DNA of 64,000 nucleotides from Octopus sinensis (lineage: Eukaryota), in assembly GCF_006345805.1 (NCBI RefSeq), contig NC_043008.1:34162001-34226000 (forward strand), written 5' to 3'. A program made the position numbers and the translations under genes. This document shows, piece after piece, positions 424-63,118 of this stretch. Numbering within the stretch: the stretch's first letter is position 1; the number at the start of each line of letters is the position of its first letter. A model generated the notes under the pieces. The model was not told the origin of the DNA. It made no database searches and worked only from the letters and a program-made list of their open reading frames with translations.

Positions 424-640
424 TATTTCTTTACTACCCACAAGGGGCTAAACACAGAGGAGACAAACAAGGACAGACATTAAGTCGATTACATCGACCC
501 CATTGCGTAACTGGTACTTTATTTATCGACCCCGAAAGGATGAAAGGCAAAGTCAACCTCGGCGGAATTTGAACTCAGAACGTAACGGCAGACGAAATAC
601 CGCTTAGCATTTCACCCGGCGCGCTAACGGTTCTGCCAGC
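424..640 (-). mobile_element. tRNA-type SINE family A, long-tail variant
   Basis: Minus strand has A-box (TGGCAGAAcCG), B-box (GAGTTCAAATT), a shared body and tail ...TTTAGCCCCTTGTGGGTAGTAAAGAAATA; many copies in the window. Confidence 0.85.
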
Positions 641-1124
641 ACAGTTGTATATACACCGGTCTGCAGGTATGTCTCTCTGAGTGTCTGACGGTCTGCCTCT
701 GTCTGTCTGTCTGTCTAACCTCCTCCCTGTCAGAGTGTTGACAATATTTATTAACAAGTACAAGTTATTATTTTTGCTGGTCTTTACAGGTGTCATTTTT
801 CTTTACATATTTTTTTTGTTATCCAAGTCATTATCACTATTATAAAATGCGATGTCGTCAAGGAGAGGATTTTCATGAAAGTGTGTAGAGTAAGAAAGAT
901 TATTTCGAATAGTTTAATTAGAATAACAAGTTTTAAAAACCACGGGAGTTATAGTAAAAAAAACACAAAAATGATATAGTTGTTAGTATCTTCGTTTGTT
1001 ACCTGGATGATAGGTGTGGAGGGCGTTAGTAAAAGTGTTAGTAGAGGACATCGAATGGAGAAGGGGTAGAAGATAGAGACAGAGATAGAGAGATAGGTAA
1101 AGATAAAGAGTGAAAGACAAGGTA

Positions 1125-2659: not shown

Positions 2660-2784
2660 GTGTATGTGTGTGTGTGTGTGTGTGTCTGTGTGTGTTGGCG
2701 GGTCTGTGTTGTAAGAAGTTTACTTCCCAACCACATGGTACTGGGTTCAATTCCACTATAACATTTTTTTTATCGGTAAAGAGA

Positions 2785-3055
2785 TTCTTCAATTTATTTT
2801 CGTCCGTCTTTACATTCTGAGTTCAAATGCTGCCAAGGGTGAACTTTGTCTTTCATCCCTTTCGGGGTCGATGAAATAAGTACCGGTTGAGCACAGTGGT
2901 TGATGTAATTGACTAGACCCATTCCCTGCCACCTCCTACAAGTTTCAGATCCTTCAGGGGTCGATAAATTAAGTATCAGTAAAACACCGGGGTCGATGTA
3001 ATCGACTGGTCTTCTCCCTACAAATTTCAGGTCTTGTGTCTATAGTAAAAAGGAT
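2785..3055 (+). mobile_element. SINE family A, degenerate, with partial internal duplication
   Basis: ttctgagttcaaat...ggggtcgat...aagtacc body occurs twice. Confidence 0.75.
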
Positions 3056-3066
3056 TATTATTATTT

Positions 3067-4062
3067 GACGGAGCTACAGTCCTGGATCAAGCGTAGATCC
3101 AGAAAGGGCGCTTGACACCTTAGGTGTCGGCAAGCGCTCACAGCTTTCTGCCAGTCGGGCAACGCGGTCGGTGGAACTTCCACTATGGAGTTATATAGGG
3201 AATTAGTGGAGGGAAAGAGCCACGATGTCCTTGGGGAAACTCTAGGCGTCGGGAGGGATCAATTAACTGGTCTTTTCCGGAGGACTTTCGGGCCGAGACC
3301 TATGGATAACCTCCAGAAATCTTTGACCTGACAGTGCTACCGGGGGCTCTGCCGGTTCGAGAGAAGCTCTACAGACACGGAAGTACTGTCAGACGGACTT
3401 GTCCGAGGTGTGCGTAGGGCGACGAAACCGTCCTGCATGCATTTGTCCAGTGTCCGTGCATTACTGGCTGGTAGAGCTTTGTTGAACAGCTGTTGTCGCA
3501 TGTAGGATGGTTCTGGTTATCAGCCGAGTCCATCGTGAAGATAACCCCGCTACCTTCCTTTGGCCGGGAAGGAAAGACAATTCTCTATCTGGTGGTTATG
3601 GCAAAAGAGGTAGTATTGTGAACGAGATTGAAAGGACTGGAGACATACTTTCCTCTTCGGCCAAGCCCTCATTGACTTTTTCAAGTTCCACTTGAAACAG
3701 ATAGTGAGAGTAGAGAGGGAAGTCCTTAGCTAGTAAATTTGTTGAAAGGTGGGTGAATGTGGTGAGGATGGCCCGTGTGAATGGGCCTACCCTGCACTTT
3801 TGTTTGTAAACCGGAGGAGTTGGGAAGGAGAGAGACGCCTGCTGAGGTGTATCTGGTGATCGAGATAACCAGAATGTGTGGGGTTCCTCGGTTGTCCTTG
3901 TGAGGAACTACCCGCTTTTCAGAAATTTTATTGTTTAATTGTATTGTTAATTGTCTTTGTTATTTTATCGTTTACTTGATTTTGGTGTAAAACCGCACGT
4001 GTTCTTCGTTTTGCATTGCCCCTATTTATTTTGCGTTCAGCCCTTGTGGCCAATAAAGAAAC
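3067..4062 (+). mobile_element. L1/Tx1-like LINE, 5'-truncated ORF2 C-terminus plus 3' UTR (pseudogene)
   Basis: Manual translation gives ALPVREKLYRHG...CPRC..DETVLHAFVQCP (zf-RVT-like CCHC), with stops; ends in AGCCCTTGTGGCCAATAAAGAAAC before (TAA)n. Confidence 0.8.
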
Positions 4063-8250: not shown

Positions 8251-9315
8251 TTTGCTACACACTACTTTCCATCCTTAATAATGAAACTTGGTGGATCCAA
8301 AAGTTAAACACACAGACACACACACAGATACACACACAGACACACACACAGATACACACAGAGACACACAAGTTGAGTTTTATATATATAGATTTCTCAA
8401 CGGGGATTTCAGTGGAGAGTTTCAGGGAGTCGCTGGCAATGTATCGTGATGATCAAAAATCCGGCCTGCTAAAATTTGGTTAAAGTGATTCAAACTGCAG
8501 ACTCAATGCAAAATGGTCACATTTAATTCAAAGCGTTAAAAATGTTATGAAAACAATTGGTATGTGTTCACAAAGTCCAAACGATTAATACGAAAAAACC
8601 CTCCAGGCTACATCCGAAAATTCATTTATTTGCCGAATTTCTACAATGTTTACGTCGATTCATTTTTATATCTTGATTTATTATTTTTCATGCAATTTAC
8701 GCATGCTTGCATGCGTGGTGAACACAGTTCACGTCAAACAGCTGACTGAGTAAAGTTCACTATTCAATGCATGGGATAAGGCCTAAACAAACACATTATC
8801 GATTTTTGCACTTGCGAGATGAATTTCGCAGCAGAAATAGCGCAGTTCAATTTTCATTCGCCTAAACTTTAAGAGACCCATTTTTGGTGGTTCTACGATT
8901 TGTTGGCTAGGAGGAGATGTGCCGGGAAGTTAAACACACAGATACACATACAGACACACAAGTTGAGTTTTATATATATATATATATTCTGTTCTTTTAT
9001 TCTTTTACGCTTATATATATAGAGAGAGTGAGAGGGGGGAGAGATAGAGAGATTGATATATGTATTTGTGTGAGTAGTGTTGTTATCGCCTATCGTTATG
9101 TCACTCCCAACTGAGCAGAACTATGGTCAAAGATATTCCAACCGTGGCCACTTCGACTTTTCTTCAACCATATTATGTTTAGGATCCCACCTCCCATTAT
9201 GACACTTTTTGAATACACAAGCATTTGAAATTTCAAGGTGTGACTTCTATTTCAAGCAAGCTGTGCATTCACGTAGCGGCTTCCTTCGTTCTATCGTTAT
9301 TATGTTATTATACTA

Positions 9316-9907
9316 AGACGGCAAGCTGGCAGAAACGTTAGCACGCCAGGAGAAATGCTTAGCGGTATTTCGTCTGTCTTTACGTTCTGAGTTCAAATTC
9401 CGCCGATGTCGACTTTGCCTTTCATCCTTTCGGGGTCGATAAATTAAGTACCAGTTGCATACTGGGGTCGATTTAATCGACTATCCCCTTCCCCCAAAGT
9501 TCCGGGCCTTGTGCCTAGAGTAGAATAGATTATTCTAAGGCGGCGAGCTGGTAGAAACGTTAGCACGCCAGGCGAAATGCTTACCGGTATTTCGTCTGCG
9601 ATTACGTTCTGAGTTCAAATTCTGCCGAGGTCGACTTTGCCATTCATCCATTCAGGGTCGATTAAATAAGTACCAGTTACGCACAGGGGTCGATATAATC
9701 GACTTAATCCGTTTGCCTGTCCTTGTTTTTCCTACCTGTGTTTAGCCCCTTGTGGGTAGTAAAGAAATAGGGACTTATTTATCGACCCTGAAAGAATGAA
9801 AGGCAAAGTCGACCTCGGCGGAATTTCAGGTCAGCACGCATAGCCGGACGAAATGATGCTAAGCATTTTGCTCGGCGTGCTGAGGATTATGTCAGCTTGC
9901 CGCCTTA
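9316..9907. mobile_element. Cluster of three family A SINEs (+ 9316-9525, + long-tail 9537-9769, - 9770-9907)
   Basis: Repeated head AAGGCGGCGAGCTGG and body; third copy inverted. Confidence 0.85.
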
Positions 9908-10225: not shown

Positions 10226-10860
10226 TAATCCAAACAAGAAAACACAGAAAAAAACACAGCAACGCAGGACGTGGAACAATTAAAGTATTATTGACGCTCA
10301 GGAAAGAAGGGAAGGAGAGTTTAACGTTTCGAGGGGAGCTCTTCATCGGAAACAAGGAGAAGGAAAGATCCCAAGAAGGGAAGACAGAGGAAAACATATT
10401 TGAGCTGGTGGTGCTCAAGAGATCACATGTTGAAAGAACAGAAGTTGAGAGGTAGTCGAATCATGGTTTTTAAAATCAAGAGAGTTTCAAAAAAGGAATG
10501 CGTGTGTGTGTGTGTGTGTGTGTGTGCAAGGATGACAAGTGTGTTTGTGCGTGTGTGTGTGTGTGTGTATTTTGGGTGAATAATAAGCAATGACAAAGTC
10601 AGCTGTCATAAGGCACTCCTTTATGACTACTAGCTGTTTGTATCAAGCCAGGTCAAAGCCAGGTCAAAAAACAAAGGGCTATATGTATCATGTGTGTGTG
10701 TGTTGTTTGTAGTGTGTGTGTGTGCATCTGTGTGTTCGTGTGTGTATGCGTAGAGTGTGGGTGTGTGGCGAGTAACTGCTTAACCTAGTGTGTGTGTGCG
10801 TGTGTGCTTGTACGTGCGTGTGTGTGTGTAGGGATGTATGTGTGGGTTCATTTGTGTGAG
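10225..10860 (-). mobile_element. Probable non-autonomous Penelope-derived element with an HHR-like motif at 10319-10353
   Basis: GTTT-CCGATGA-aGAG(ctccc)CTC-GAAACGTT-AAAC; boundaries approximate. Confidence 0.5.
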
Positions 10861-10863
10861 AGT

Positions 10864-11173
<310 letters not shown>

Positions 11174-12173: not shown

Positions 12174-12464
12174 TATGGCAACCGAATAATTATCACATAT
12201 CATATTACAGACAAATTCCTCTATTTATACAATATCGAGGTCTCATTCGTTCTTTTGTTGTCTTACCATTACTATTAATACATCAAAGCCATTAATAAAA
12301 ACATTGTTAGACTGTTTATCTCCAGGTCAGCGCTTGTCGTGCAGATCGTATAATGAAATGGATTCTAGCCGAAATCATTCCGTCTTTTATTTCAGAGAAA
12401 CTGTATCTAGAAATACATCCGTCAATGTTAGCTTTTGTAATAACTGATTCCAGTTGTTTGTGTT

Positions 12465-13957
12465 CGTTTGTTTCTTTCGTTCGTTCGTTCGTTCCTTCTT
12501 TCTTTCGTTCGTTCCTTCTTTCTTTCTTTCTTTCTTTCGTTCGTACCTTCCTTCTTTCTTTCGTTCCTTCCTTCCTTCTTTCTTTCGTTCGTTCGTCCTT
12601 CTTTCGTTCGTTCGTTCCTTCTTTCTTTCGTTCGTTCGTTCCTTCCTTCTTTCGTTCGTTCGTTCGTTCCTTCTTTCTTTCGTTCCCTCCTTCCTTCTTT
12701 CTTTCGTACCTTCCTTCTTTCTTTCGTTCGTTCCTTCTTTCTTTCATTCGTTCCTTCTTTCTTTCTTTCTTTCTTTCGTTCGTACCTTCCTTCTTTCTTT
12801 CGTTCCTTCCTTTTTTCTTTCTTTCGTTCCTTCCTTCCTTCTTTCTTTCGTTCGTCCTTCCTTCTTTCGTTCGTTCGTTCCTTCTTTCTTTCGTTCGTTC
12901 GTTCGTTCCTTCTTTCGTTCGTTCGTTCGTTCCTTCTTTCTTTCGTTCCCTCCTTCCTTCTTTCTTTCGTACCTTCCTTCTTTCTTTCGTTCGTTCCTTC
13001 TTTCTTTCGTTCGTTCGTTCCTTCCGTCTTTCTTTCTTTCGTTCGTTCCTTCTTTCTTTCGTGCCTTCCTTCTTTCTTTCGTTCCTTCCTTCTTTCTTTC
13101 GTTCGTTCGTTCCTTCCGGCTTTCTTTCGTTCGTTCGATCCTTCTTTCTTTCGTACCTTCCTTCTTTCTTTCGTTCCTTCCTTCTTTCTTTCGTTCGTTC
13201 GTTCGTTCCTTCTTTCTTTCGTACCTTCCTTCTTTCTTTCGTTCGTTCCTTCTTTCTTTCGTTCGTTCGTTCCTTCTTTCTTTCGTTCGTTCGTTCGTTC
13301 CTTCTTTCGTTCGTTCGTTCCTTCTTTCTTTCATACCTTCCTTCTTTCTTTCGTTCCTTCCTTCTTTCTTTCGTTCGTTCCTTCTTTCTTTCGTTCGTTC
13401 GTTCCTTCTTTCTTTCGTTCGTTCCTTCTTTCTTTCGTTCGTTCGTTCCTTCTTTCTTTCGTTCGTTCGTTCCTACCGTCTTTCTTTCGTTCGTTCGTTC
13501 CTTCTGTTTTTCGTACCTTCCTTCTTTCTTTCGTTCGTTCCTTCTTTCTTTCGTTCGTTCGTTCCTTCTTTCTTTCGTTCGTTCGTTCCTTCTTTCTTTC
13601 GTTCCTTCTTTCTTTCTTTCGTTCGTTCGTTCCTTCTTTCTTTCGTTCGTTCGTTCCTTCTTTCTTTCGTTCCTTCCATCCTTCTTTCGTACCTTGCTTC
13701 TTTCTTTCGTACCTTCCTTCTTTCTTTCGTTCGTTCGTTCCTTCTTTCGTACCTTCCTTCTTTCTTTCGTTCGTTCGTTCGTTCCTTCTTTCATTCGTTC
13801 GTTCCTTCTTTCTTTCGTACCTTCCTTCTTTCTTTCGTCGTTCCTTCTTTCTTTCGTTCGTTCGTTCGTTCCTTCTTTCTTTCCTTCCTTCCTTCTTTCT
13901 CTCCTTCCTTCTTTCTTTCCTTCTTTCTTTCTTTCTTTCTTTCTGTCTTTCTTTCTA
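12465..13957. repeat. 1.5-kb compound (TTTC/TTCG/TTCC)n pyrimidine-strand satellite
   Basis: Directly visible; accounts for the roughly 500-aa stop-free ORFs. Confidence 0.95.
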
Positions 13958-13989
13958 ATTTTAATATTTTAATAGCGGTTTTTGTTGTG

Positions 13990-14387
13990 AAGGCGGTGAG
14001 CTGGCAGAACCGCTAGCACACCGGGCGAAAAGCGTAGCCGTATTTCGTCTGCCGCTACGTTCTGAGTTCAAAATTCCGCCGAGGTCGACTTTGCCTTTCA
14101 TCCTTTCGGGTCGATAAATTAAGTACCAGTTACGCACTGGGGTCGATATAATCGACTTAATCCGTTTGTCTGTCCTTGTTTGTCCTCTTTGTGTTTAGCC
14201 CCTTGTGGGTAGTAAAGAAATAGGTATTTCGTCCATTATTACGTTCTGAGTTCAAATTCCGCTGAGGTCGACTTTGTTTTTCATCCTTTCTGGATCGATA
14301 AAATAAGTACCAGTCGATAACTAGGGTCAATGTACTTGACTAAACCCCTCCCTCGATCTTCCTGGCCATATGCCAAAATTTGAAACC
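13990..14387 (+). mobile_element. Long-tail family A SINE (to 14222) nested in an older family A SINE
   Basis: Junction AAAGAAATA|GGTATTTCGTC resumes the SINE body. Confidence 0.85.
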
Positions 14388-14679
14388 AATAGTGGTTTTC
14401 GTTGTTTAGTCACACCTTTTGTGTAGACCCTGGTCAGGGACGTTCTGACCGTGACCATCCAATCTTTTCAGATGTAATTTATCTCGGATATAATGAATGT
14501 AAGAATAAATTATCCAATGACCTTCCATTTTTAAAGAAGCATATAGAGTATAATTTGAGGGCTAATTGGCAGAGTCGTTAGAAAATTGGATTGAAATGCC
14601 TCGCAGCAGTTTTGCGATAGTCTCCGCTCTGAGATGAAATCTCACTGAAGCCAACTTTGCGTTTTATCATTTCGAAATC

Positions 14680-16109: not shown

Positions 16110-17840
16110 ACTGCCCACCGAAATGATCTCCAAGTACCTCGACCGTGTCTTTGTTCCCCTAGTGGCTTCCCTCCCCTCATACATTCACAACACCAAGCAT
16201 GCTCTCTGTCTGTTTAACTCTTTCTCCTTCCCTCCTGGCCTCTCTCAACTTCTGTTTACTCTCGTCATTGAATCTTTGTACACGGTGGTCCCGCACAACG
16301 AAGGCCTACTTAAGCTGAAACACTTCCTTGACCTTTGGCCAGACCCTCAGCCTGAGACCTTCACACTTTTTCGTTTGGCCGAACTTGTCCTCCCCCTCAA
16401 CTGCTTCTCGTTCGTGGGCGAGTTTTACCAACAGTTCTCAGGAGTGGCTATGGAAGCGAGAATGGGTGCCAACTATGCGAACCTGTTTACTGACTATGTT
16501 GAGGCCCAGATATTCTCACAGTTCGCTGGTCCCACTCCTGAGCTATAAGGTCGTTAAGTCGATGACTATATCGGCGCAAGCTCACTCTCCCGTGAACATC
16601 CTGACACTTTCCTCTCCTTTGTAGAAACCTTCCTCATCCCTCCTGTCCTCGAATTCTCTTACACTGTCTTTAAATCTTCCGTCGAATTTCTCGATATTTC
16701 TGTCTGCATACACCACTCCGCTCTCACAACCTCCATCCACTACAAACACACAGACTCATACTCCTACCATAATTTCTCCTCCTTCCACCCTACCCACATC
16801 AAGCTCTCCATCCCCTACTTCCATTTCCTCCGTCTACGCTGGCTCTGCAGTGATGACCATGATTTTGAGACCCAGTTTCAACTCATGGCCCGCCACTTCA
16901 CCCTACATGTATATTCCGTCACCATTATCCACACTGCCCTTGCCCGGGGACGATCTGTGAACCATGGTTTTGCTCTTTCCCCTCGCATCCGCCCCACCCT
17001 TACCCGTCTTCCCTTTCCCTTCACCTACCACCCCTCTACTCTACCCCTCTAACGCACCATTCTCCGAGCCTTCCGGTGATCCAAGTCCGACCCTTCCACC
17101 TTACACATCTTCTCTAACTCACCCCTTCCTTTTATCAAAGGAACCCATAACCTCCGTGACCTCCTGGTCCAGTTTCTTCCCTACCCCTGCCTCGCAGCCT
17201 GGCTCCTTCCCCTGCTCTCGCCCACACTGTCGCACCTGCTCCTACCTCTCCGACACCGCTGTCCTCACTGGCACCCACCGCCATCCTTATCACATCACCG
17301 ACTCCTTTGCCTGCACCTCCAGTAATGTTATTTACTGCATCTCCTGCTCTCCCTGTCTTTCCTTTTGCATTGGTCAAATGGGATACTGCTTGGCTGACCG
17401 GTTCGCGGAGCACTTTTGAGACACCAGACCCGGCAATGACACCCCGGTCTCGCGCCACTTCCACTCTACCGGTCATTCGGACTGTCTCTGCACATGGGCC
17501 ACCCGGACTCTCGCCTTCGCCGCGAACAAGCATTGTCTTAAATCTCGCTTAGTTCCTTTGCGCAGTATGGGCTCAACTAGCTATCTCTTTTCATCTGACA
17601 CCACCCCTCACAGATTCCCACACACCTCCCACATTCAACTGCCTCTCCCCTCCACCTACACGCTGCATACCGCCTACCTCGGTACTCTCGCCACACACAT
17701 ACCACCATACACTGTTCAAATCATTACTCACTTCACACACCATTACATACCCACCCACAAACACCTTACCACTCTACATACACCAGTACTCAGCACTTGT
17801 GCACCATCACCTCAATACTCAAGATATCAGCTTTCCTCAG
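16110..17840 (+). mobile_element. Penelope-like element (RT + GIY-YIG), pseudogenised; Neptune-like
   Basis: CPTEMISKYLD...GVAMEARMGANYANLF...(Y)IDDY RT motifs; CSRPHCRTC linker; CTSSNVIYCISC...IGQ...LADRFAEH nuclease. Confidence 0.9.
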
Positions 17841-23041: not shown

Positions 23042-23209
23042 ACAAGAAAGATGTATGCCTATTTATTTATTTATGTGTGTGCGTATACATGACAATACAC
23101 CCTTCACTTATTCTCTCTCTCCCTCTTACACACGCACACACATCCATTTCATCTGATGTTTGATTCTGTATGTGGATATCTGTGTGTGTGCGCGCATGCG
23201 TGCGGCGTT

Positions 23210-24017
23210 CCACAATTGCCAGAAAAAAGCAGAGGAATTTTCTTTCTTGATGCTCTTGGTGACACAGGTAAAACATTTGTAACATTGCTTCTCTCCAAGG
23301 TAAGGCAACAAAAAAGAGTTACAGTTGCTGTACCATTGTCTGGCTTTGCTGCCACCATTCTTCCAGGAGGACAAACAGCTCATTCTGCTTTTAAATTACC
23401 ACTAAAACTGGTCACAAATGACAGTCCAATTTGTAACATAAGCAAAGATTCAGGTTCAGCAGAAGAGTTGTGCCAATGCCACCTTATCGTTTGGGATGAA
23501 TGCACCATGTCACATAGAGGCACAATGGAAGCTCTTGGTAAGACCTTACAGGACATCAGAGGCAACAATAGGAGGAGTTACATTAGATTTATCAGGAGAC
23601 ATCAGACAGATATTACCAGTCATTCCGAGAGGAACAAGATCTGATGAAATAAAAGTATGCATTAAGTCGTCACACCTATGGAATAAAGTACCGAAATTCT
23701 TCTTCAATACTAACGTGCAAGTTTTATTACATTGGGACCAATGTGCAAAGCAGTTTTCAACCTGGCTCCTCCAATTAGGAAATGGGAAAGTACCACTTGA
23801 TGGGAATGATGATATCAGTTTGGCTCATATTGCTAACATGGTGAATTCCCCAGCTCATTTGAAGAACAGGGCATTGCCAGACTTAAGCAATAATTATAAT
23901 TCACATAATGGTTGTGTGAAAAGGAAATTCTTACTTCCAAAAATGACACAATAGCCAGAATTAACCATGAATTAACAAATAAGATCCCAACAGTCATTAA
24001 GGAGTACAAATCAGCTA

Positions 24018-26959: not shown

Positions 26960-27510
26960 AGACATAGCCTGTGTAATATGGTTCCGGGTTCAGTCCCACT
27001 GCGTGACCCACTGAGCAGGTGTCCTCTTCGATATAAGAATGAATTTCGTAGAAGTGAACTGAAAGAATCCCATTGTATATGTGTGTGTGCGTGTGTGTGT
27101 GTGTGTGTGCGTGCGTGCGTGCGTGTGCGTGTGTGTGTCTTTGTGTCCCCCACCATTACTTGACAATCAGTGTGGATGTGTTTACATCGAAGTACCGGGG
27201 TCAATTCGTTCGACTAATATTCTTCAAGGCGGTGCCCCAGCATGGCCGCATTCTAATGGATGAAACAAGTTACGGATAAAAGATAAATGATAGTTGTTGA
27301 ATCACATACATAATCTCTTCCACGACTGAGATATAATTGTCATTGTCTTTCGCATCTTTGAGGTATAAGGGCCTCATTTTTTAAAATTCAATTATATGGT
27401 TCCAGGTTCAGTCCCATTGTGTGGCTCCTTGGGCAAATGTCTTCTACAGTCGGGCAGACCAAAAGCTTTGTAAGTGGATTTGATAGACGAAAACTGAAAG
27501 ATGCCGGCCA
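26960..27510. mobile_element. Family B SINE fragments (+ 26960-27290; - 27395-27510)
   Basis: Shared head and tail motifs. Confidence 0.7.
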
Positions 27511-27534
27511 TACACACACACACACATACACACA

Positions 27535-27581
<47 letters not shown>

Positions 27582-27630
27582 CATACATATATATACATAT
27601 ATATATATATATATACGTATATATATACAT

Positions 27631-27663
<33 letters not shown>

Positions 27664-27696
27664 CATATTAATACATATATATATACATATATATAC

Positions 27697-29239: not shown

Positions 29240-30955
29240 TTATTCGAATCCTGTTTAAGTCAAGTTTTGTTTAAGTCAAGTTTTGTTCAAGTAGTGAGTT
29301 CTTGTTGGGTGAGTTGTATCCAGTTTTGTTCAAGTAGTGAGTTCTTGTTGGGTGAGGTGTATCCAATTATGGGTGGCTTATCTGGTATTCTTTGAAGGAA
29401 TCTATCCAGACTCTGTTTAAAGTTGATGGGATCCTTTTCCTCTTTAATCTCCCTCGGGACAATGTTAAATAGGGCAGGGCCTGTTGAGGAAAAGAAATTA
29501 TGTTGCAGTGTACATGTATGTTGTGATTTTGAATTGGGCAGGGGACGTATAGCCCGTGGTCCAAGTCTTGGGTGAACCTTGAAGCTAATGTTTAGGTCGT
29601 TTGGGCAAAGTTGGCGGTATATTTTCCACATCGTACAAATGATGTACCGCTCACGGCGACGCTGGAGGGAGTAAAGTTTCAAGGCTTTAAGGCGATCCCA
29701 ATAATCGAGAGCAGCCATGCCTTCAATTTGTTTAGTGAGAGCCCTCTGGGGTGACTCAATTCTGGAGATGTTTTGTCTTGTGTGAGGAGACCACAGTGGG
29801 CAGCAGTATTCAAGGTGTGGCCGTACAAAGGAGGAAAAAAGTGGTATGATGACACCTTGTTCTCTGGACCGGAAAGTTCTTAAGATCCAGGAACTCATCC
29901 TACGAGCTATATCGACCTTCTTGTTGATGTGTGCACTTCAACTGAGATCGTCATCAACAATTACACCCAGGTCTCTGATATTGTTAGAGGCTGTGAGCGG
30001 TTCCCCTGAAGGAAGAGAGTATGGTTGTTTTAGTGAGGAATTTCTTCCAAAATGCATCAGCTCAAATTTTCTCTCATTCAGTTGCATTTTGTTTCTGTCT
30101 GCCCATTGACTCACAGCATATAGATCAGACTGGAGTTGAGTTCGGTCTGCTTCTTCATTGACAATTTGCTGGAGCTTAGTGTCATCAGCGAATATTTTCA
30201 CTTTGCAGTAATGTACTACACTGGAAAGGTCGTTTACGTAAATTATGAAGAGTAGCGGATCCAAAACAGTTCCCTGGGGAACACCGCTGGTGACTTTTGC
30301 TGGGTTTGAGTGGACTCCATCAACTACAACATGTTGTGTTCTATTCGCCAGGAAATACTTAATCCAGTGTAGAACTTTTGCACGGATTCCAACATTTGCC
30401 AATTTTGAGAGTAGGATGTTATGGTCTACCCTGTCGAACGCTTTACTGAAGTCAAGATATATGACGTCAGAGTTCGAACCTGTTCACAAGGCTTTGAGTA
30501 CATCTTCAATGTGGTGTAAGAGCTGTGTTAGACAGTCTCTGCCACAGCGAAAGCCATGCTGATTTGAATTTAGGAGTTTGTGGGTCTCCAGGAAGTCAGC
30601 TATCCTTGATCTTAACACTCTTTCAAACACTTTAATGATGTGGGAGGTGAGTGAGATTGGGCGATAGTTGACTGCGAGGGATCTATTTCCCTGTTTGAAA
30701 ACCGGGATGACCGACTGGGATAGAAACTGTTTCGGTATATAACCTGCGTCTAACGAATTTCTCCAGAGGTTGGTCAGAGGGACTGCAAGTTGATATCTAC
30801 ATTCCTTCAGGAGACTAGCGGGAAATCTATCAGGGCCTACAGCAGAGTAATGTTTGACCTCATTTATTGCTGCTACGATGTCGGTGGCAGTGAAGGTTAT
30901 GTCTGAGATTTTGTGTTGGGAGCCAACTTCGTTCGTTTCCCTTACGTCAATATCA
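29240..30955 (-). mobile_element. CR1-like LINE ORF2 (complete RT domain), pseudogenised, 5'-truncated
   Basis: YRPISLTS, DFSKAFDRVDH, GVPQGTVL, IFADDTKL, VRPHLEYCCPLWSP, LKLYSLQRRRERY; contains a stop and a frameshift. Confidence 0.93.
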
Positions 30956-38771: not shown

Positions 38772-40500
38772 TAAGGTGGCGAACTGGCAGAAACGTTAGC
38801 ATGTCGGACAAATGCTTTTCATCTGTCTTTATGTTCTGAGTTCAAATTCCCACGAGATCGACTTTGCTTTTAATACTTTAGGAGTCGATTAAAGGAAAAA
38901 GCACCAGTTGAACACTAAGGTCGCTATAATCGATTTCCCTCTTTTACTCCAACTTGTTGACCTTGTGCCAAAATTTGAAACCCATATTATATGTAACTTA
39001 ATGCAATAAAGTGTTCCCTGATGATACGTTGTGGTTGAGCATTTAAATGCGCTTGGAACACCTATTACTAGGATCCAAACTGCCATAATGTTGAAAAATG
39101 CGTAGGAACTCTAATGTAAGCTTGTGTTTATCTTTATTTCTTCTATATTTGCTTTGTAGTAATTCTACTCAGTATTAAAACTGGTACTCCGTCGGTAAAG
39201 ACAATGAATGTTCAAGCTGAGCCGATCGACGGAACAGCCTGCTCATGAAATTTACGTGCGAGTGGCTGAGCACTCCTCAGACACGTGTACCCTTAACATC
39301 GTTCTCAGGGGGACTCAACGTGACACAGAATGTGACAGGGCTGGACCTCTGAAACACAGGTATAATTCATTTTTGCCAGTTGAGTGGACAGGAGTAGTGC
39401 TAAAAAAGTGACTTGTTGAAGGACAAAATGCGCCAGCAGAAATGTAACTCATGATCCAGCGATCGTGAGCCGAGTATCCTAATCGCTGAGCCATGCGCCT
39501 TCACATACTACTCAGTATAGAAGTTACGTATACTGGAAGTAAGTTGGTTAATGATTATCTACGCGCAGCTTTAAACATAACAGTCGTACTTCTATTTGTA
39601 CATACAATTTCTACTACACACACACACACACACACGCACACACACATATATGCATACACACACATACACATATGCATACAGACACACACACATATTTTAC
39701 ATGTTTCAGTCATTAGACTGCGTCCATGCTGGGGCGCCGTCTTGAAAAGTTTTTAGTCAAATAAATCGACTTGGTACTTATTTTAAGCCTGATACTTATT
39801 CTATAGGTGTCTTTTGCCGATCCACTAAGTTACGGGGATGTAAACACACCAATAATACCCGTTGTCAAGCGGGGGCGGGGGAGGCAAATACACACACACA
39901 TGTATATATGTATAATGGGTTTCTTTCAGTTTCTGTTCACCAAATCCACTCACAAGGCTTCGGTCGGCCCGAGGTTATAATAGAAGGCACCTGCCCAAGG
40001 TGTCACACAGTGAGACTGAACCCGGAACCACGTGACTGGGAAGCAAGCTTCTTACTACATATCAAAAATGGTCAAAGTTCTTTCTCAAGCCATACGTTCA
40101 TAAGGTCGGTTTACTGGATTCTGTGGCATATATATCCTTCTCTGGGCGATACGCCCATCCGTCACAGCCGTTTTCCTATTTGCCAGCTGAGCGAACCGGA
40201 GTAATGTGAAGTGAAGTATTTTGCTCAAGAACACAAGGCAACGCTCGGTCCAGTAGTCGAAACTACAATCTTACGTTCAAGAGTGCAACACCCTAACCAC
40301 CTAGCCACGCGCCTCCACACACGCACACGCATATAGGCGCAAGTGTGGTTGCGTAGTAAGAAGTTTGCTTCCCAAACACATGGTTCAGTGCTCGGTCCCA
40401 CAGCATGGCGTCTTGAGCAAATGTCTTCCATAACAGCCCCGGGTCGACCAAAGCCTTGCGAGTAGATTTTGTAGACCGAAACTGAAAGGAGCCCGCCGTG
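38772..40500. mobile_element. SINE cluster (A + 38772-38985; C - 39182-39500; B - 39690-40050; C - 40165-40318; B + 40334-40500)
   Basis: Family-diagnostic motifs; boundaries approximate. Confidence 0.75.
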
Positions 40501-40793
40501 TGTGTGTGTGTGTGTGTGTATGTGTGTATGTGTGTATGTGGTGTGTGTGTGTGTGTGTATGTGGTGTGTGTGTATGTCGTGTGTGTGTATGTCGTGTGTG
40601 TGTATGTCGTGTGTGTTTGCATAATATTTCAAAGAGTACATACATTAAATGCACAGACACACACACACACATATATACATGCATTACATAGATACTGACA
40701 TAGACATATGCATATATTTATCTGTCTAGCTATCTCTTTCGTTTTCTCTTTCCCTCTCTCTTCCCTCTCTCTTTCCCTCTCTCTTTCCCTCCT

Positions 40794-40846: not shown

Positions 40847-41130
40847 GTCGACCTCAGCGGAATTTGAACTCAGAACACAGCGACGGACGAAATACCTATT
40901 TCCTTACTACCCACAAGGGGCTAAACACGGAGAGGACAAACAAGGAAGGGACAAACGGATTAAGTCGATTATATCGACCTCAGTGCGTAACTGGTACTTA
41001 TTTAATCGACCACGAAAAGATGAAAGGCAAAGTCGGCCACGGCGGAATTTGAACTCAGAACGTAACAGCAGACGAAATACGGCTACGCATTTCGCCCGGC
41101 GTGCTAACGTTTCTGCCAGCTCGCCGCCTT
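40847..41130 (-). mobile_element. Long-tail family A SINE nested in a family A SINE
   Basis: Junction at 40897|40896 reads AAGGAAATA|GGTATTTCGTC on the minus strand. Confidence 0.85.
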
Positions 41131-44857: not shown

Positions 44858-46537
44858 CAGTGCCTTGCAAAAGTCTACACCCTCCTTGGAAACTGGATGT
44901 ATTTTGTTTATTTTGATAGGAACAATTAATATTTTAAACTCCAATAATTTGTTTTAATAAGCAGATCTATCACACTTTTATTTAATACACAAAATATATT
45001 TGAAAAATTTAAAACTGATTCTTAAACAAGGATAATTTTGAAAAATGTCTTTTCAAAAGTCTACACCCCCTTTGGAATGTCTTCAGCTAATACAATTTGG
45101 ATGATCCTGCTGCATCAATTACAGCCTGCAGTCGCCTCGGGTAGCCTTCCAGGAGCTTGCTGCAGTGGTCTGCTGACAGTTTTCGCCATTCTTCATGAGA
45201 GAACTGCTCGAGCTGTGTCAGATTAGATGGGGAGCGTCGGTGCAAAGCCAGCTTTAGATCTCGCCATAGATTTTCTATAGAATTGAGGTCTGGAGACTGG
45301 CTGGGCCATTCCAAAACTGTGATTTTCTTGCTAGCAAACCAAGCTTTACTGCTTTTTGACACATGCCTGGAGCCATTATCTCGTTGAAACTTGAAATTGC
45401 AACCCAAGCGCAGAGCTCTAGCAGATTTCAGTAGGTTTGCCTCCAATATTTCTTGGTACTTGACACTGTCCATGATACCTTGGATGGTTGCCAAGGTTCC
45501 AGGCTCTGCAGCTTAAAAACAGCCCCCAAAACATGATCAAACCACCGCCATGCATTACAGTGGGGACGGTGTAATGAGGTTGGTGTGCAGTGCCTTTTTT
45601 CAGCCAAACGTAGCGTTTCGTATTTTTTCCAAATGACTCGACTTTGATCTCATCTGATCACAAAATCTTTCACCACATGGTCATGGAATCATTAATGTGA
45701 CTTTTGGCAAAGTTTAGCCAAGCTTGCTTGTGTAAAGGCTTCAGTAGGGGCTTTTTTCTAGCTACCCTCCCTTGCAGGCCAGACCGGTGCAATACACTAG
45801 AAATTGTAGATGTATGGACATCTGTCCCAGTACTGGAAACTGAAGCTTTCAAGTCTTCAAGTGTTGCACTAGGGTTGGAGGTTGCCTCCCGGACCATTTT
45901 GACTTTGCTCTTCCGGTAAGTTTGCTCGGTCTCCCAGTTCTTGGGAGGGTAGCACTGGTTTTGTGCACTAACTACTTCTTAACTACAGTTTTAACAGTGC
46001 TTTGGGGCAATTCTAAAGTTTTTGCAATCTTTTCATAGCCATTATTTTCATTGTACTTTTGAATAATAAGTTCCTGAGACAGAGGCTTGCCCATTTTTTT
46101 CCCGAGTTGGACACCTTGTGTTGACAGTCAGAGTCCAAAGACCAACATACCAAAAAACCATGTGGTGAATGATTTTGTAGGCAGTTAAATCACCTTATTC
46201 AGCAAAATGATAGACTGGCCAAGTTTGTTTGTTATGGTAGAACGCACATGTCACTTTTGATTGTTTTGGATTGTATACATCAATGACAAACTACCTGAGA
46301 ACACAATATAATATCTGGGAGGGGAGGGGGTAAACTTTTGCAAAGACATTTTTCTAAGTTATATGATTTTAAGAATCAGTATGAAATTTTAAAAATGTAA
46401 ATTCTATATCGAAGGAAAGTGTGGTGGATCTGCTTATTATTTAACAATCATTGGAATTGAAAAAATGTGCTGTTCCCTGTTAAATTATACAAAATATATA
46501 AATTTTCAAAGGGGGTGCAGACTTTTGCAAGCCACTG
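44858..46537 (-). mobile_element. Full-length Tc1 element (1680 bp) with IR/DR-type long TIRs; transposase disrupted
   Basis: TA-flanked CAGTG...CACTG termini; inner direct repeats near 45050-45077 and 46325-46345; ARKKPLL, VLEWPSQSPDLNSIENLW. Confidence 0.93.
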
Positions 46538-52219: not shown

Positions 52220-52613
52220 GGTTTTAAATTTTGGCACAAGGCCAGCAATTTCGGTGATAGGGAAAGTCGTTTACATCGACCCCAGTCTTCAACTGGTACT
52301 TATTTTATCGGCTTCGAAAGGAGGAAAGACAAAGTCGATTCTGGCGGCATTTGAACTCTGGACATAAAGATGGATGAAATACCTATTTCTTTACTACCGA
52401 CAAGGGGCTAAACACAGAGAAGACAAACAAGGACAGACAAACGGATTAAGTCGATTATATAGACCGCAGTGAGTAACTGGTACTTATTTAATCGACCCCG
52501 AAAGGATGAAAGGCAAAGTCGACCTCGGCGGAGTTTGAACTCAGAACGTAGCGGCAGACGGAATACCGCGAAGCATTTCGCCCGGCGTACTAACGACTCT
52601 GCCAGGTTGCCGC
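52220..52613 (-). mobile_element. Long-tail family A SINE nested in an older family A SINE
   Basis: Junction at 52384|52383 reads AAAGAAATA|GGTATTTCATC on the minus strand. Confidence 0.85.
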
Positions 52614-52719
52614 ATTTATCCTTTTAAACAACCTCAATAAACAACGAGCCGAAAGATATAAGGAAGACCTCGATAATTCTAGCCACTTTCTAATAAGCAC
52701 ATTGTACTTTTGCTCAATG

Positions 52720-55104: not shown

Positions 55105-55278
55105 ATAGGCGCAGGCGTGGCTGTGTGACAAGAAGCTTATTTCGCAACCACATAGTTACGGGTTCAGTCCCACTGAGTGGCACCTTGGGCAAGTGTCTTC
55201 TACTATAGACTTGAGCCGATCAAAGACTAGTGAGTGGATTTGGTAGACGGAAACTGAAAGAAGCCCGTCGTATATATG

Positions 55279-55333
<55 letters not shown>

Positions 55334-55621
55334 ATATATATATATATATAAACGATCAACGTCACCCTTTTCAAACCTAGCCAGGCTCATGGGCCCGGTT
55401 TCCCGGTTTCTGTGGTGTATGTGCCCCCCTCCCCCCAGCTGAACGAGACGCCAATCCATCGCAGCGTTACTCAAGAAACAGGAAGAGAGAGTCCCCGCCG
55501 GACCTTTTAGGTGTTTTCGCTCAATAAACACACACAACGCCCGGTCTGGGAATCGAAACCGCGATCCTCCGACCGCGAGTCCGCTGCCCACCATTGCCCA
55601 CTGGGCCACCATTGCGCCTCC
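55105..55621. mobile_element. SINE B head (+ 55105-55272) and family C SINE (- 55360-55621)
   Basis: tRNA boxes; tail shared with 41700-41790. Confidence 0.8.
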
Positions 55622-55691
<70 letters not shown>

Positions 55692-56537
55692 GAAATTAAA
55701 TATAAATTACAAAATGGGACAAGAACGCAAAAACACACAAAGAGATGACACAAAAAAAAAACAGACGGGTCATTCGAAGCCTCTAATCTTCAGTCGGGAA
55801 CCGGATCATTTTAGCAATTTCGGGAGGTATATGTATGTGCATGTGTGTGTTTGTGCTTGTTCCCCGCCATTGCTTGACAACCAATGTTGGGCTATTTACA
55901 TTCACGTAACTTAGCTGTTCAGCAAAATAGTCCGATACAATAAGTACCAGGCTTTTCTTTTAAACTATTCATTTAAACTAAATTAAATAAACGAGGTCAA
56001 ATCATTTAAACAAAAACTCTTCAAGGCATTGCCCCAGCATACCCGCAGTCTACTGACTGAAACAAGTAAATGATAAATTAACTGAAATTGTCTTACTAAA
56101 AACAAATAAAATATTAGATAAATTAATAAACAATATAAAAGTAAATTATTACCATACCATACAGAGATATTGAAGGAACGCAAAATAAACTATTTCCACA
56201 TATTTTGTTTATCTGAAAACAATTTTACGTTCGTAATAGTCGGCAAGACTTACGAAACATTAGATATGTTAGTAGAACAAGGAACACCCAGTCAAGCAAT
56301 ATTAGTGAATGACATTATTTTATACTTCATCGTAAAGTTAGACAATGCAAATACAAATGTAGTTAGATATAGAAAAACGCAAAATGGGCTGTGAAATTAT
56401 ATGAAGACAGAGAAACGAAGTTTTACGCACTGTAGAAGTGCTTATTATTCGAAACCTCGTCAGGCCAGTAACGGATGAAGGTCAGGATATATAATGTGAT
56501 TGTGGACTATGTTTCAGCCTATCGCTGTTCTGGTATA

Positions 56538-57807
56538 CGAGGGGCGTTCAATAAGTAATGCCCCTGACCCACTTGCAGTTATTTGATCTAGCTGAAATTT
56601 TGCATGTGCACTTATTTATACGTCTATAGATTAAGTGGTGAATTACAGCCCTGAACTAATTGTGGTTGCTGATTTACAGGTGTTTGAACTGAGTCAAGTG
56701 TGAAATGGAGCCTGCTGAGTGTCGAGCAGTAATCTGGTTTTTGTATTTGAAAGGACGCACACCACGGGAGACTTTTGATGAAATGAAAGTAACTTATGGT
56801 GATGATGCCCCATCATATGACCTTGTAAAACGCTGGCATTGTGAATTCAAACATAGCCGGAACTCTGTGGAAACAGCTCCCAGATCTGGTCGCCCCCTTC
56901 TGCCGTTGATGAGACGTCTGTCCGTCAAGTTGAGGCTGCCATTTTGGAAGGTCAACGCATAACTATTCGCCAAATAGCCCATAAGGTCAAGATTAGTACC
57001 GGGTCAGTGGAAACTATCATTCATGACCATTTGCATATGCAAAAGGTGTCTGCCAGATGGATTTCCAGGTTGCTCACACCTTTCCAGAAGCAAGAACGCG
57101 TTGAGTGCTCGAGGATGAATTTGGAGATGTGCCAAGAAGATGAGTCAAAATTTTTCAAAAGACTGATCACACAGGATAAAACCTGGGTCCATCACTATGA
57201 TCCATAGACCAAAGCCCAGTCAATGCAGTGAAAGCACCGTGACTCACCTCCTCCAAAGAAGGCAAGGGTGCAGCCCTCCGCTGACAAGGTTATGCTCACA
57301 GTCTTCTGGGACCAGGACGGAGTAGTGATGACAGATTTCCTGGCAAAGGGCACCACAATTACAGGAGCCTATTATGCTTCACTTTTGAGGAAATTAAGAG
57401 AAGCTATCAAAATCAAGAGGCGGGGCAAGATCAGCAAAGGCATCCTCCTCCTGCAGGACAACGCTCCGGTCCACAACTCGCGTGTCGCCAGATCAGAAGC
57501 ACAGGCGTGCAGCTATGAACTCCTTCCCTTGCACCCTCTGATTTTCACCTCTTACCAGCCATGAAGTTGATTTTGAAAGGAAAGCGTTTCCCAGATGATG
57601 CAGCCTTGATTTCTGAAGTCACGTCGTGGTTGGAGGACCAAGCTGGGGTCTTCTACAAAAACGGTCTCCAGAGCTGTATCAAACGATGGGAGAAATGCAT
57701 AACTCTGGGTAGTTCCTATGCAGGAAAAGACTAATAACTGTGCCAACTGTCGTTGCTCTACTGCTATGGGAAATGGGTCAGGGGCATTACTTATTGAACG
57801 CCCCTCG
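56538..57807 (+). mobile_element. Full-length mariner (irritans/Himar1-like), 1270 bp; transposase 56705-57734 disrupted
   Basis: Perfect 34-bp TIRs and TA TSD; HLHMQKVSARWI, ITQDKTWVHHYDP, LQDNAPVH; stops, frameshifts and loss of YSPDL. Confidence 0.95.
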
Positions 57808-59386: not shown

Positions 59387-60135
59387 CGTACGTGTGTGTA
59401 TGTGGGTGTGTGGAGTGGTCTTCCGCACAGTTTCAATCGATCGAATTTCACTCCAAAGGCATTGAGTGACTGGGTGATAGAAAACAAAGCAAGACATTTG
59501 CCGAAGATGTTTCACAGCTGGATAAAACTAGACAAAATGTAGTCTCAAAACAAACTCCAAAACCTCACTGCCATGCAGACATATTTTCTAACAAATTTTA
59601 TATTGTCTCTAATAAAAAGAAATATGTGAAACATTAGCCATAAAGAAACCGATTTTTAGGGTCATTAACAACTTGAAGGCGTTTTCAATGAGTTCGCAAA
59701 TTTATGTTTATTACTCCTCGTTTCGGGAAAAGAAAAGTAGGAGAAAAGAAAACCAAAACCTTGATAGTAAATTGGTGCATTATGACATCTCATTTCTTAA
59801 CTATACATCATTAAATTATTCCTATTAATACCCATTCGACCCACTTTTTCCTACATTTGATAAACAGAGGGAAGTGTTGACCAGGTCGTAGAAGTAGGAC
59901 ATAAAACTTAGACATCTAATAATGATAACAATAATCCTTTCTACAAGAACTGGCACAAGAACTGACATTTGAGGGAAGGGGGGGATAGTTGATTACATCG
60001 ACTCCAGTGTTTCACTGGTACTTAATCTATCAACCCCGAGAGGATGAAAGGCAAAGTCAACTCAAAACATAGCGACGGGCGAAATACTGCTAGGCATTTC
60101 GTCCAGCGTGCTAAATGATTCTGCCAGCTCGCCGC

Positions 60136-60655
<520 letters not shown>

Positions 60656-62875: not shown

Positions 62876-63118
62876 ATTATTATTGTTGTTGTTGTTGTTA
62901 TTATTGTTGTTACTAACGCAGCGAGCTGGCAGAATAGTTAGTACGCCGGATAAAATGCTTAGCGGTATTTCGCCCGTCGCTACGTTCTGAGTCCAAATTC
63001 CGCCGAGGTCGACTTTGCCTTTCATCTTTTCAGGGTCGATAAAATAAGTACCAGTTGAATACTGGGGTTGATGAAATCGACTCATCTCCACCTCCTCCAA
63101 GCTTCCCTTGTGGCAAAA

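What the first reader, a model, noticed from the sequence alone, without database searches (positions are those of the whole stretch)
13990..14387. SINE that inserts site-specifically into its own family
Seen: three independent loci have the same junction, tail-AA(A/G)GAAATA|GGTATTTCRTC, after which a second SINE body resumes (14222|14223; 40897|40896 minus; 52384|52383 minus). At 14.2 and 52.3 kb the downstream half is more diverged and ends in the older short tail. Only one head is present, and at 52.6 kb that head is diverged like the host. Established: Tx1-clade endonucleases can be sequence-specific for tRNA or snRNA genes. Inference: a Tx1-mobilised SINE uses the A/B-box spacer of tRNA-derived SINEs as a landing pad, with a homology-assisted 5' junction. 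The alternative is a dimeric master element.
Basis: partly seen in the sequence, partly recalled or inferred. Interest (0 to 1): 0.8.

Follow-up and report, generated by a model that had tools for sequence, protein, structure and literature searches.

The report
Octopus SINE repeatedly joined to older SINEs
In this octopus-like genome stretch, a young short retroposon (SINE) is joined at exactly the same base to an older, more decayed relative at three unrelated places, which looks more like repeated targeted insertion into its own family than copying of one double element, though 64 kb cannot prove it.

Summary
The window holds five copies of a young "long-tail" SINE subfamily (tail ...CCCCTTGTGGGTAGTAAAGAAATA). 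Three of them (14.2, 40.9 and 52.4 kb) are followed at the same base by GGTATTTCRTCC and the rest of an older short-tail SINE that lacks its first ~47 nt. Flanks are unrelated, so the loci are independent. The downstream halves are about 2-3 times more diverged than the upstream units. They have lost CpGs like free-standing old copies and share almost no private mutations. The E (14.2 kb) and G (52.4 kb) pair therefore argues against a single dimeric master (p about 0.005, one full pair only). The outer target-site duplication at 14 kb also looks old. The best reading, at about 45% confidence, is repeated position-specific integration into resident older copies, resolved in register through head homology. 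Rivals are a multi-master dimer family, template-switch chimeras and ectopic conversion. Nothing supports or tests a Tx1 partner, since no LINE with this tail lies in the window. No octopus genome data could be reached, so the decisive genome-wide and orthologous empty-site tests remain undone. The closest precedent is the target-specific SINEU-3/Tx1-Mar system of crocodilians.

The parts
13990..14222 (+). E-up: full-length young long-tail SINE unit (head, body, long tail ending AAAGAAATA)
   Evidence: It has 4 differences in 119 nt from the young consensus and keeps 10/11 CpGs.
14223..14387 (+). E-dn: older short-tail SINE unit lacking its first ~47 nt. It starts at GGTATTTCGTCC and ends at GCCAAAATTTGAAACC.
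   Evidence: It has 15 differences in 119 nt from the standalone-old consensus and keeps 5/9 CpGs.
14209..14233 (+). Junction GTAGTAAAGAAATA|GGTATTTCGTC (14222|14223). It contains a short palindrome, GAAATA-GG-TATTTC.
   Evidence: The predicted hairpin is not significantly stable.
13971..13988 (+). Left copy of the target-site duplication around the whole composite E (AATAGCGGTTTTTGTTGT)
   Evidence: 16/18 identical to 14388-14405. Both mismatches are CpG-type transitions.
14388..14405 (+). Right copy of the target-site duplication around composite E (AATAGTGGTTTTCGTTGT)
40897..41130 (-). F-up: full-length young long-tail unit. It shares the rare head variant GCGTAGCCG with E-up.
40847..40896 (-). 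F-dn: first 50 nt of an older unit (GTCGCT subtype), cut after GGTCGAC by an (AG)n array
52384..52616 (-). G-up: young long-tail unit. Its head carries several states otherwise seen only in old copies (ACCTGG, GAGTCG, TCGC).
52220..52383 (-). G-dn: older short-tail unit (GTCTTT subtype) lacking its first ~47 nt
   Evidence: It has 17 differences in 119 nt and keeps 5/9 CpGs.
424..643 (-). A: monomeric young long-tail copy, 5'-truncated by ~7 nt, tail followed by (TA)n/(TG)n
9537..9769 (+). C: monomeric young long-tail copy. Its tail is followed by GG and an inverted old SINE fragment.
9770..9906 (-). D: 5' part (head to ...GGGTCGATAAATAAGTCCC) of an older SINE in the opposite orientation, abutting the tail of C. 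Its 3' part is missing.
9315..9536 (+). B: SINE with a third tail variant (...CCTTGTGCCTAGAGTAGAATAGATTATT), directly upstream of C
62962..62974 (+). Example of an unoccupied target site (GCGGTATTTCGCC) in a free-standing old copy. Others are at 9362, 42741, 60078(-), 61252(-), and in the young units themselves.

Best explanation
A young subfamily of an octopus SINE with tRNA-type A/B-box-like promoter motifs (head + body + 60-nt 'long tail' ending AAAGAAATA) has repeatedly integrated at one fixed position of resident, older copies of the same SINE superfamily. That position lies between nt ~47 and 48 of the head (...GC|GGTATTTCGTC), between the A-box-like and B-box-like motifs, and the insert has the same orientation as the host. 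Shown: the junction is identical at three unrelated loci. The part 3' of the junction is as old as free-standing old copies, and the part 5' of it is young. Inferred: reverse transcription is primed at a nick just 5' of GGTA on the top strand. Most 3' flanks begin with GGTA or a near match: the three composites read GGTAT, copy C reads GGGAC (GGTAC in the consensus), and the O. bimaculoides copy may read G(G/A)TAC, while copy A, followed by (TA)n, does not. The cDNA, being homologous to the host's own head, then anneals to the host's upstream end, and the 5' junction is completed in register. The product therefore has one head, no new visible target-site duplication, and keeps the old outer duplication of the host. 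The partner LINE and the source of the specificity are unknown. The specificity could come from the endonuclease, from microhomology, or from easier completion where homology is available. Once formed, a composite may itself be copied. The 14 kb and 40.9 kb copies could be such sisters.
For: Three identical junctions against 0.01 expected, with unrelated flanks. Pairwise E-G mismatch is 23/232 upstream against 33/162 downstream, p=0.005. In the homologous 119-nt region, young units differ from their consensus at 4-7 sites. Downstream halves differ at 15 and 17 sites (5/50 for F), within the range of free-standing old copies (6-32); p=0.0003. E-dn and G-dn share only 2 same-state differences out of 15 and 17. 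One is a CpG decay and the other a subfamily marker also present in copies H and K. F-dn and G-dn carry different old subtypes, GTCGCT and GTCTTT. CpG retention is 29/33 upstream against 14/24 downstream, p=0.014, and the downstream value equals that of standalone old copies, 51/86. The outer duplication of E has lost 2 of its 4 CpG instances, which is ~9 times likelier at the old than at the young decay rate. Monomeric long-tail copies end at exactly the same AAATA, so this is a true element terminus. At least nine copies keep the site unoccupied. In G-up, 5 of 7 non-CpG head differences match states of old copies, against 1 of 6 for A, C and E (weak). Target-specific SINEs driven by a target-specific LINE are documented: SINEU-3 with Tx1-Mar (PMC4494074).
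Against: Only three composites exist, with one full-length pair for the age test. The host's 5' part is never seen separately, so integration is inferred, not observed. No partner LINE and no LINE inserted at the same site are in the window. E and F share a rare head variant and a downstream change, as sister copies of a dimer would. Heads of E and F look young, so the crossover would have to lie in the first ~20 nt. Only E has a recognisable outer duplication. At the C-D junction the other half of the interrupted SINE is missing although no homology could have helped there, which fits a chimera or a target deletion as well. The hairpin at the site is not statistically supported.
Confidence: 0.45

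Rival explanations
1. Dimeric (composite) SINE subfamily. One or a few master copies (young unit + 5'-truncated old unit) arose once and were then retroposed as a unit through the old short tail. The junction is constant because it is inherited.
For: The junction is constant. The whole composite E is flanked by one target-site duplication placed right after the short tail. E and F share GCGTAGCCG in the head and CCGCTGAGG downstream. Their upstream (16/231) and downstream (6/50) differences are statistically compatible. Dimeric SINEs are common (own knowledge; PMC4758252).
Against: For E against G the two halves do not have the same age: p=0.005 pairwise and p=0.0035 on private differences. 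Downstream CpG loss equals that of old free-standing copies. Only 2 of 15-17 downstream differences are shared. F-dn and G-dn belong to different old subtypes. A neutral downstream half in an evolving master lineage could give at most ~2x the age of G (~12%), but ~20% is seen, Poisson p=0.003. Monomers A and C end exactly at AAATA, which 3' truncation of a dimer would not give.
Confidence: 0.22
2. Recurrent template-switch chimeras. Reverse transcription starts on an old-type SINE RNA at a new genomic site. At GGUA(U) the enzyme jumps to the 3' end of a young long-tail RNA (microhomology or end-to-end jump) and copies it to its 5' end. This is the mechanism of U6-L1 chimeric retrocopies.
For: The 5' partner is full-length with an exact 3' terminus, and the 3' partner is 5'-truncated. 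There is one duplication around the chimera (E) and no separate host 5' part. The C-D junction, with an antisense SINE piece, and the CCTT-microhomology chimera at 2775-3070 show that SINE-SINE joints of other kinds exist here. Template switching is the standard explanation for SINE module exchange (PMC4758252).
Against: Both parts would be the same age, yet the downstream halves and the outer duplication of E look old. That would require decayed genomic copies as RNA donors. Switch points in known chimeras vary, whereas here there are three identical ones. Old-type states in the head of G are unexpected under this model.
Confidence: 0.18
3. DNA-level spread. An existing composite converts resident old monomers by ectopic gene conversion or unequal recombination, using the head and the downstream body as homology arms.
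For: It would give old outer parts, a young middle, a constant junction and no new duplication, as seen.
Against: The arms are short (about 47 and 165 nt) and only ~85% identical, and the heterology is 185 nt. Three of about twelve old copies in 64 kb would be a very high conversion rate. The model does not explain the GGTA-like flanks of non-composite copies or the C-D junction.
Confidence: 0.07

Closest known systems
SINEU-3 / Tx1-Mar of crocodilians (Kojima 2015, PMC4494074)
   Same: A SINE found almost only at one position of another repeat family, by independent insertions. This is explained by a target-specific LINE partner. Tandem copies arise from sequential insertion at the same site.
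   Different: There the target is an unrelated Mariner DNA transposon. Both target halves and a 16-bp duplication flank each insert, and Tx1 LINEs sit at the same target. Here the target is the SINE's own superfamily, only the 3' target half is separately visible (one head, in register), and no partner LINE is known.
Tx1L in Tx1D (Xenopus) and other Tx1-clade target-specific LINEs (Keno, Kibi, Koshi; as summarised in PMC4494074)
   Same: Retroposons that use a fixed sequence in a multicopy element as a landing site.
   Different: Those are autonomous LINEs with a known endonuclease. Here no LINE is identified, and Tx1 involvement is untested.
Dimeric or composite SINEs (Alu, tRNA dimers; PMC4758252)
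   Same: Two SINE-related units head to tail with a constant joint, and one outer target-site duplication (copy E).
   Different: In a dimer family both halves share one genealogy. Here the halves of E and G differ about two-fold in divergence and in CpG decay.
U6-L1 and other chimeric retrocopies made by template switching (Buzdin et al. 2003, cited in PMC4758252; bioRxiv 10.1101/2025.02.02.635956)
   Same: A full-length small RNA copy joined by its exact 3' end to a 5'-truncated second retrocopy, with one duplication around both.
   Different: The truncation point of the 3' partner varies in those chimeras and both parts are coeval. Here the point is fixed and the 3' part looks older.
R2 integration, helped by target sequence carried on or co-transcribed with the element RNA (Eickbush; mentioned in PMC4494074; otherwise own knowledge)
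   Same: Homology between the cDNA and the upstream target can give a uniform, in-register 5' junction.
   Different: R2 is an autonomous rDNA-specific LINE. For this SINE the role of homology is inferred only.

Membership tests
tRNA-derived SINE | Internal Pol III promoter: A box and B box in the head | tested here: inconclusive
   By eye there is a B-box-like GAGTTCAAATTCC at nt ~72-84 and an A-box-like TGGCAGAA at nt ~12-20 in all copies. No formal promoter model was run.
tRNA-derived SINE | Head recognisable as a tRNA (cloverleaf or sequence) | tested here: not met
   ARAGORN finds no tRNA-like gene in the window. Rfam gives no match at gathering score. The tRNA origin therefore rests on the box motifs only.
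tRNA-derived SINE | Retroposed copies with target-site duplications and a LINE-like 3' tail or simple repeat | tested here: met
   Duplications: 18 bp around E and 10 bp around K. Old copies L, M and N end in and sit in (ATT)n. The partner LINE tail was not found in the window.
Target-specific SINE (SINEU-3 / Tx1-Mar type) | Same insertion position and orientation in independent copies of the target repeat | tested here: met
   Three loci have an identical junction and unrelated flanks.
Target-specific SINE (SINEU-3 / Tx1-Mar type) | Target copies predate the insert and are independent of each other | tested here: met
   Downstream halves are older and unshared. This rests on n=3, with one full pair.
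Target-specific SINE (SINEU-3 / Tx1-Mar type) | Both halves of the target flank the insert, with a duplication of the target site | tested here: inconclusive
   No separate 5' half is present. GGTATTYCGTC occurs both in the upstream head and at the start of the downstream half, which could be an 11-bp duplication or simply homology.
Target-specific SINE (SINEU-3 / Tx1-Mar type) | A LINE with the same 3' tail and the same target preference | not testable with these tools
   No LINE with this tail is in the window, and no octopus genome was reachable.
Dimeric SINE family | Both units share one genealogy and age across copies | tested here: not met
   For E against G, 10% upstream against 20% downstream, p=0.005. 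CpG retention is 29/33 against 14/24. Only 2 downstream differences are shared. E against F is compatible with a shared origin.
Dimeric SINE family | Whole unit flanked by its own target-site duplication | tested here: inconclusive
   Met for E. Not found for F and G.
Template-switch chimeric retrocopy | Full-length 5' partner ending at its exact 3' terminus, 5'-truncated 3' partner, single outer duplication | tested here: met
   (duplication in E only)
Template-switch chimeric retrocopy | Both partners integrated at the same time (same age) | tested here: not met
   This could be rescued only if the donors were decayed copies.

The most novel reading that the evidence does not exclude
A SINE subfamily that 'homes' into a fixed position of older members of its own superfamily. 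It uses the target's homology to its own head to finish integration, so that each event turns a monomer into a one-headed dimer. This would be a self-targeting, safe-harbour strategy for a non-autonomous retroposon, and a recurrent rather than one-off route to dimeric SINEs.
Probability: 0.4. Interest if true: 0.7.

Novelty: new variant of a known kind. Interest (0 to 1): 0.5.

Why it matters
Dimeric and composite SINEs are usually explained by a single founding accident followed by amplification. If the same joint is instead made again and again by targeted integration into resident family members, that would show three things. First, a non-autonomous element can inherit sequence-specific targeting. 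Second, a SINE family can serve as its own safe harbour. Third, homology between insert and target can shape the 5' junction. It would also matter for repeat annotation and age estimates in cephalopod genomes, where SINEs make up ~8-12% of the DNA. Such composites would be mis-called as one family with one age.

Tried and rejected
(1) Getting more copies from public data failed. A protein-database search with the SINE's open antisense frame gave a single hit, Octopus bimaculoides A0A0L8H450. Its gene and a window ORF are not in the contig index. A metagenome scan for the tail gave 0 hits. A search with the window's LINE reverse transcriptase gave only relatives at 66% identity or less, on short non-octopus contigs. 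Sequence strings are not found in the paper library.

(2) The 'G head is diverged like the host' argument was rejected as a strong point. Heads of monomeric young copies are as diverged.

(3) A hairpin or cruciform at the site as the cause of specificity was rejected. The RNA fold of the element (z=-1.6) and the DNA folds of the site (z between -0.75 and +0.5) are not better than shuffles.

(4) Segmental duplication of the loci was rejected, because the flanks are unrelated.

(5) Random nesting was rejected. This SINE family covers ~5% of the window and the exact site is about 1e-4 of positions.

(6) I first read the copy at 2775 as another chimera at the same site. It is better read as a diverged 5'-truncated old copy.

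(7) Searches for duplications around C, C+D, B+C+D, F and G found nothing.

(8) A weak tail-like match at 48868 and 49538 (81% over 42 nt, E=2.9) was treated as chance.

Full report
**What is there**

The window carries about sixteen copies or fragments of one SINE superfamily with tRNA-type A/B-box-like promoter motifs. The consensus head reads AAGGCGGCGAGCTGGCAGAA...GAGTTCAAATTCCGCC. The only database relative of its antisense open frame is an Octopus bimaculoides predicted protein at 87% identity. The source is therefore an octopus or a close relative.

The copies carry three tail variants, all containing a CCTTGTG core:
- an old 'short tail', ...GGCCTTGTGCCAAAATTTGAAACC(ATT)n;
- a second tail, ...CCTTGTGCCTATAGTAGAAAAGG(ATT)n;
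- a 60-nt 'long tail'...GTTTAGCCCCTTGTGGGTAGTAAAGAAATA.

Exactly five copies carry the long tail. I label them A (643..424, minus strand), C (9537..9769), E (13990..14222), F (41130..40897, minus) and G (52616..52384, minus). They are 88-93% identical to each other and form the youngest subfamily in the window.

**Check of the observation**

In E, F and G the last base of the tail is followed by GGTATTTC(G/A)TCC. After that comes the rest of a SINE of the older type, starting at the position homologous to nt ~48 of the head. The 22-mer across the joint occurs three times with at most one mismatch, against 0.01 expected.

E-dn and G-dn run to the old short tail. F-dn is cut after 50 nt by an (AG)n array. 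Each composite has a single head. The flanks of the three loci share nothing with each other, so these are independent sites rather than segmental duplicates.

Of the two remaining long-tail copies, A is followed by (TA)n. C is followed by GG and the 5' part of an old SINE in the opposite orientation, labelled D. Both end at exactly the same AAATA. That base is therefore a real element terminus, and the long-tail monomer is a mobile unit in its own right.

**Are the two halves the same age?**

- Pairwise, E and G differ at 23/232 sites upstream and at 33/162 downstream (Fisher p=0.005).
- In the 119-nt region present in both halves, the young units differ from the young consensus at 4-7 sites.
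- In that same region E-dn and G-dn differ at 15 and 17 sites (F-dn 5/50) from a consensus built only from free-standing old copies.
- That lies inside the range of those free-standing copies, 6-32 (p=0.0003).
- E-dn and G-dn share only two same-state differences. One is a CpG decay and the other a subfamily marker also present in copies H and K.
- F-dn has the GTCGCT variant and G-dn the GTCTTT variant of the old family.
- CpG sites are retained at 29/33 in the upstream units and 14/24 in the downstream halves (p=0.014).
- The downstream figure equals that of free-standing old copies, 51/86.

A master lineage whose downstream half drifted neutrally could give at most about twice the age of G, roughly 12%. 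About 20% is seen (Poisson p=0.003).

So for the E/G pair a single dimeric master is disfavoured. The joint seems to have been made at least twice, on older partners. The caveat is that this rests on one full-length pair and small counts.

E and F may be sisters. They alone share GCGTAGCCG in the head and CCGCTGAGG downstream. Their upstream (16/231) and downstream (6/50) differences are statistically compatible.

**Flanks**

Only E has a clear outer target-site duplication: 13971-13988 AATAGCGGTTTTTGTTGT and 14388-14405 AATAGTGGTTTTCGTTGT. It encloses the whole composite. Both mismatches are CpG decays. Losing 2 of 4 CpG instances is about nine times likelier at the old than at the young decay rate.

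This favours the view that the outer boundaries belong to an old event, namely the host's own insertion. It counts against both a young dimer copy and a young template-switch chimera, but it is a single duplication. No duplication was found for F, G, C or the B-C-D cluster.

**Heads**

G has 7/49 differences, but the monomers A (5/42) and C (4/49) and also E (5/49) are similar, probably because the head is CpG-rich.

There is a slightly better hint. Five of the seven non-CpG differences in the G head coincide with states seen in old copies (ACCTGG as in O, GAGTCG as in P, AGTAC as in N, TCGC as in M and P). The figure is one of six for A, C and E. From nt 59 onward G is of the young type (TGCCGC). 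This fits an old head joined to a young body but is not significant on its own.

**Mechanism**

The anatomy is a full young unit with an exact 3' end, a fixed joint, an old 3' partner, one head, and an old outer duplication. This is what one expects in three steps:
1. The young RNA is reverse-transcribed from a nick at ...GC|GGTATTTC in a resident old copy.
2. The cDNA is homologous to the host head and pairs with the host's upstream end.
3. The 5' junction forms in register.

A possible 11-bp duplication is GGTATTYCGTC, which is present both in the head and at the start of the downstream half.

The 3' flanks of non-composite copies may also start with GGTA. The C-D junction reads GGGAC where the old consensus has GGTAC. 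The O. bimaculoides protein back-translates to ...AAAGAAAT-G(G/A)TACATCAT. This suggests either that GGTA is the end of the RNA or that it is a short priming microhomology. Four bases cannot explain the preference for SINEs. The specificity would then have to come from the partner's endonuclease, or from the easier completion of integration where homology is available.

I found no LINE with this tail in the window, so the Tx1 assignment is untested. Old copies L, M and N lie inside (ATT)n arrays, which points to a microsatellite-preferring partner for the old family. Dong-R4, CR1, L1-Tx1 and RTE are the recently active LINE groups in O. vulgaris (PMC13282606). The predicted hairpin at the site is not statistically supported.

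**Rivals**

- A dimer family with several masters fits the constant joint, the duplication of E and the E/F similarities. It does not fit the age asymmetry.
- Template-switch chimeras of the U6-L1 type fit the anatomy, the C-D joint and the CCTT-microhomology chimera at 2775-3070. They predict coeval halves, a young duplication, and usually variable switch points.
- Ectopic conversion from an existing composite fits the ages. It needs unlikely efficiency with short, diverged arms.

I put targeted integration at about 0.45, dimer amplification at 0.22, template switching at 0.18 and conversion at 0.07.

**Comparison with known systems**

Target-specific SINEs are known. SINEU-3 of crocodilians sits almost exclusively at one position of Mariner-N4_AMi and is thought to be driven by Tx1-Mar LINEs with the same preference. 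Tandem copies arise there by sequential insertion (PMC4494074). Tx1-clade LINEs target U2 genes, microsatellites or DNA transposons (same paper).

What would be new here is a target inside the element's own superfamily, together with the one-headed, in-register product. That would make dimer formation a recurrent process. I therefore rate it a new variant of a known kind, conditional on the integration reading.

**Limits**

No octopus genome sequence could be reached with the tools. The genome-wide census, the tree of downstream halves and the orthologous empty-site test were not run. These tests would settle the matter.

Noticed in passing
window 2775-3070 (+): Another SINE-SINE composite of the same superfamily. 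A 5'-truncated old unit stops inside its tail at ...CAGATCCTT and is joined to a second unit starting at CAGGGGTCGATAAATTAAG. The joint lies in a CCTT(T)C microhomology, which suggests a deletion between tandem copies or a template switch.
   Followed up: partly
window 9315-9906: Cluster of three SINEs: B (third tail type, +), C (long tail, +) 20 nt later, then D (old, inverted, 5' part only) abutting C's tail. The 3' part of D is missing and no duplications were found.
   Followed up: partly
window 59971-60138 (-), 61096-61314 (-), 62915-63100 (+): Old SINE copies L, M and N sit inside (ATT)n / (GTT)n / (TAC)n microsatellite arrays and end in (ATT)n. This suggests a microsatellite-preferring LINE partner for the old subfamilies.
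   Followed up: partly
window 12463-13956: A 1.5-kb satellite-like array built on TTTC / TTCG units (periods 4, 20 and 24; 81% matches), directly upstream of composite E. It generates long spurious ORFs on both strands.
   Followed up: partly
window 2695-2770, 10848-11170, 27388-27666, 39908-40640, 55220-55753 and others: A second, unrelated SINE-like repeat (…CCAACCACATGGTTCYGGGTTCAGTCCCACTGCG…-type, usually followed by TA/TG microsatellites) is scattered through the window. It was recognised from recurrent ORF peptides and blast hits of F's flanks.
   Followed up: no
window 23156-23954 (+): Two adjacent ORFs match the PIF1-like helicase family (E=9e-27 and 2e-16). They are probably a frameshifted Helitron-type remnant.
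   Followed up: partly
window 29287-30402 (-): LINE remnant with an RVT_1 reverse-transcriptase domain (E=1e-12) plus a C-terminal ORF. The best database relatives are only 51-66% identical, and its 3' end does not match any of the SINE tails.
   Followed up: partly
window 45087-45494 (-) and 57268-57564 (+): Fragments of Tc1-type (DDE_3) and mariner-type (Transposase_1) transposases.
   Followed up: partly
window 16123-17419 (+): These ORFs look by eye like a Penelope-like element, with an RT motif followed by a GIY-YIG-like CX..C / YIGQ segment. There was no Pfam hit at E<=0.01.
   Followed up: no
window 14037-14049 and 41071-41083 (-): In E-up and F-up the head copy of the target motif reads GCCGTATTTCGTC instead of GCGGTATTTCGTC, so the first G of the landing site is changed. 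Either they are sister copies, or this is a young sub-lineage whose own site is altered.
   Followed up: no
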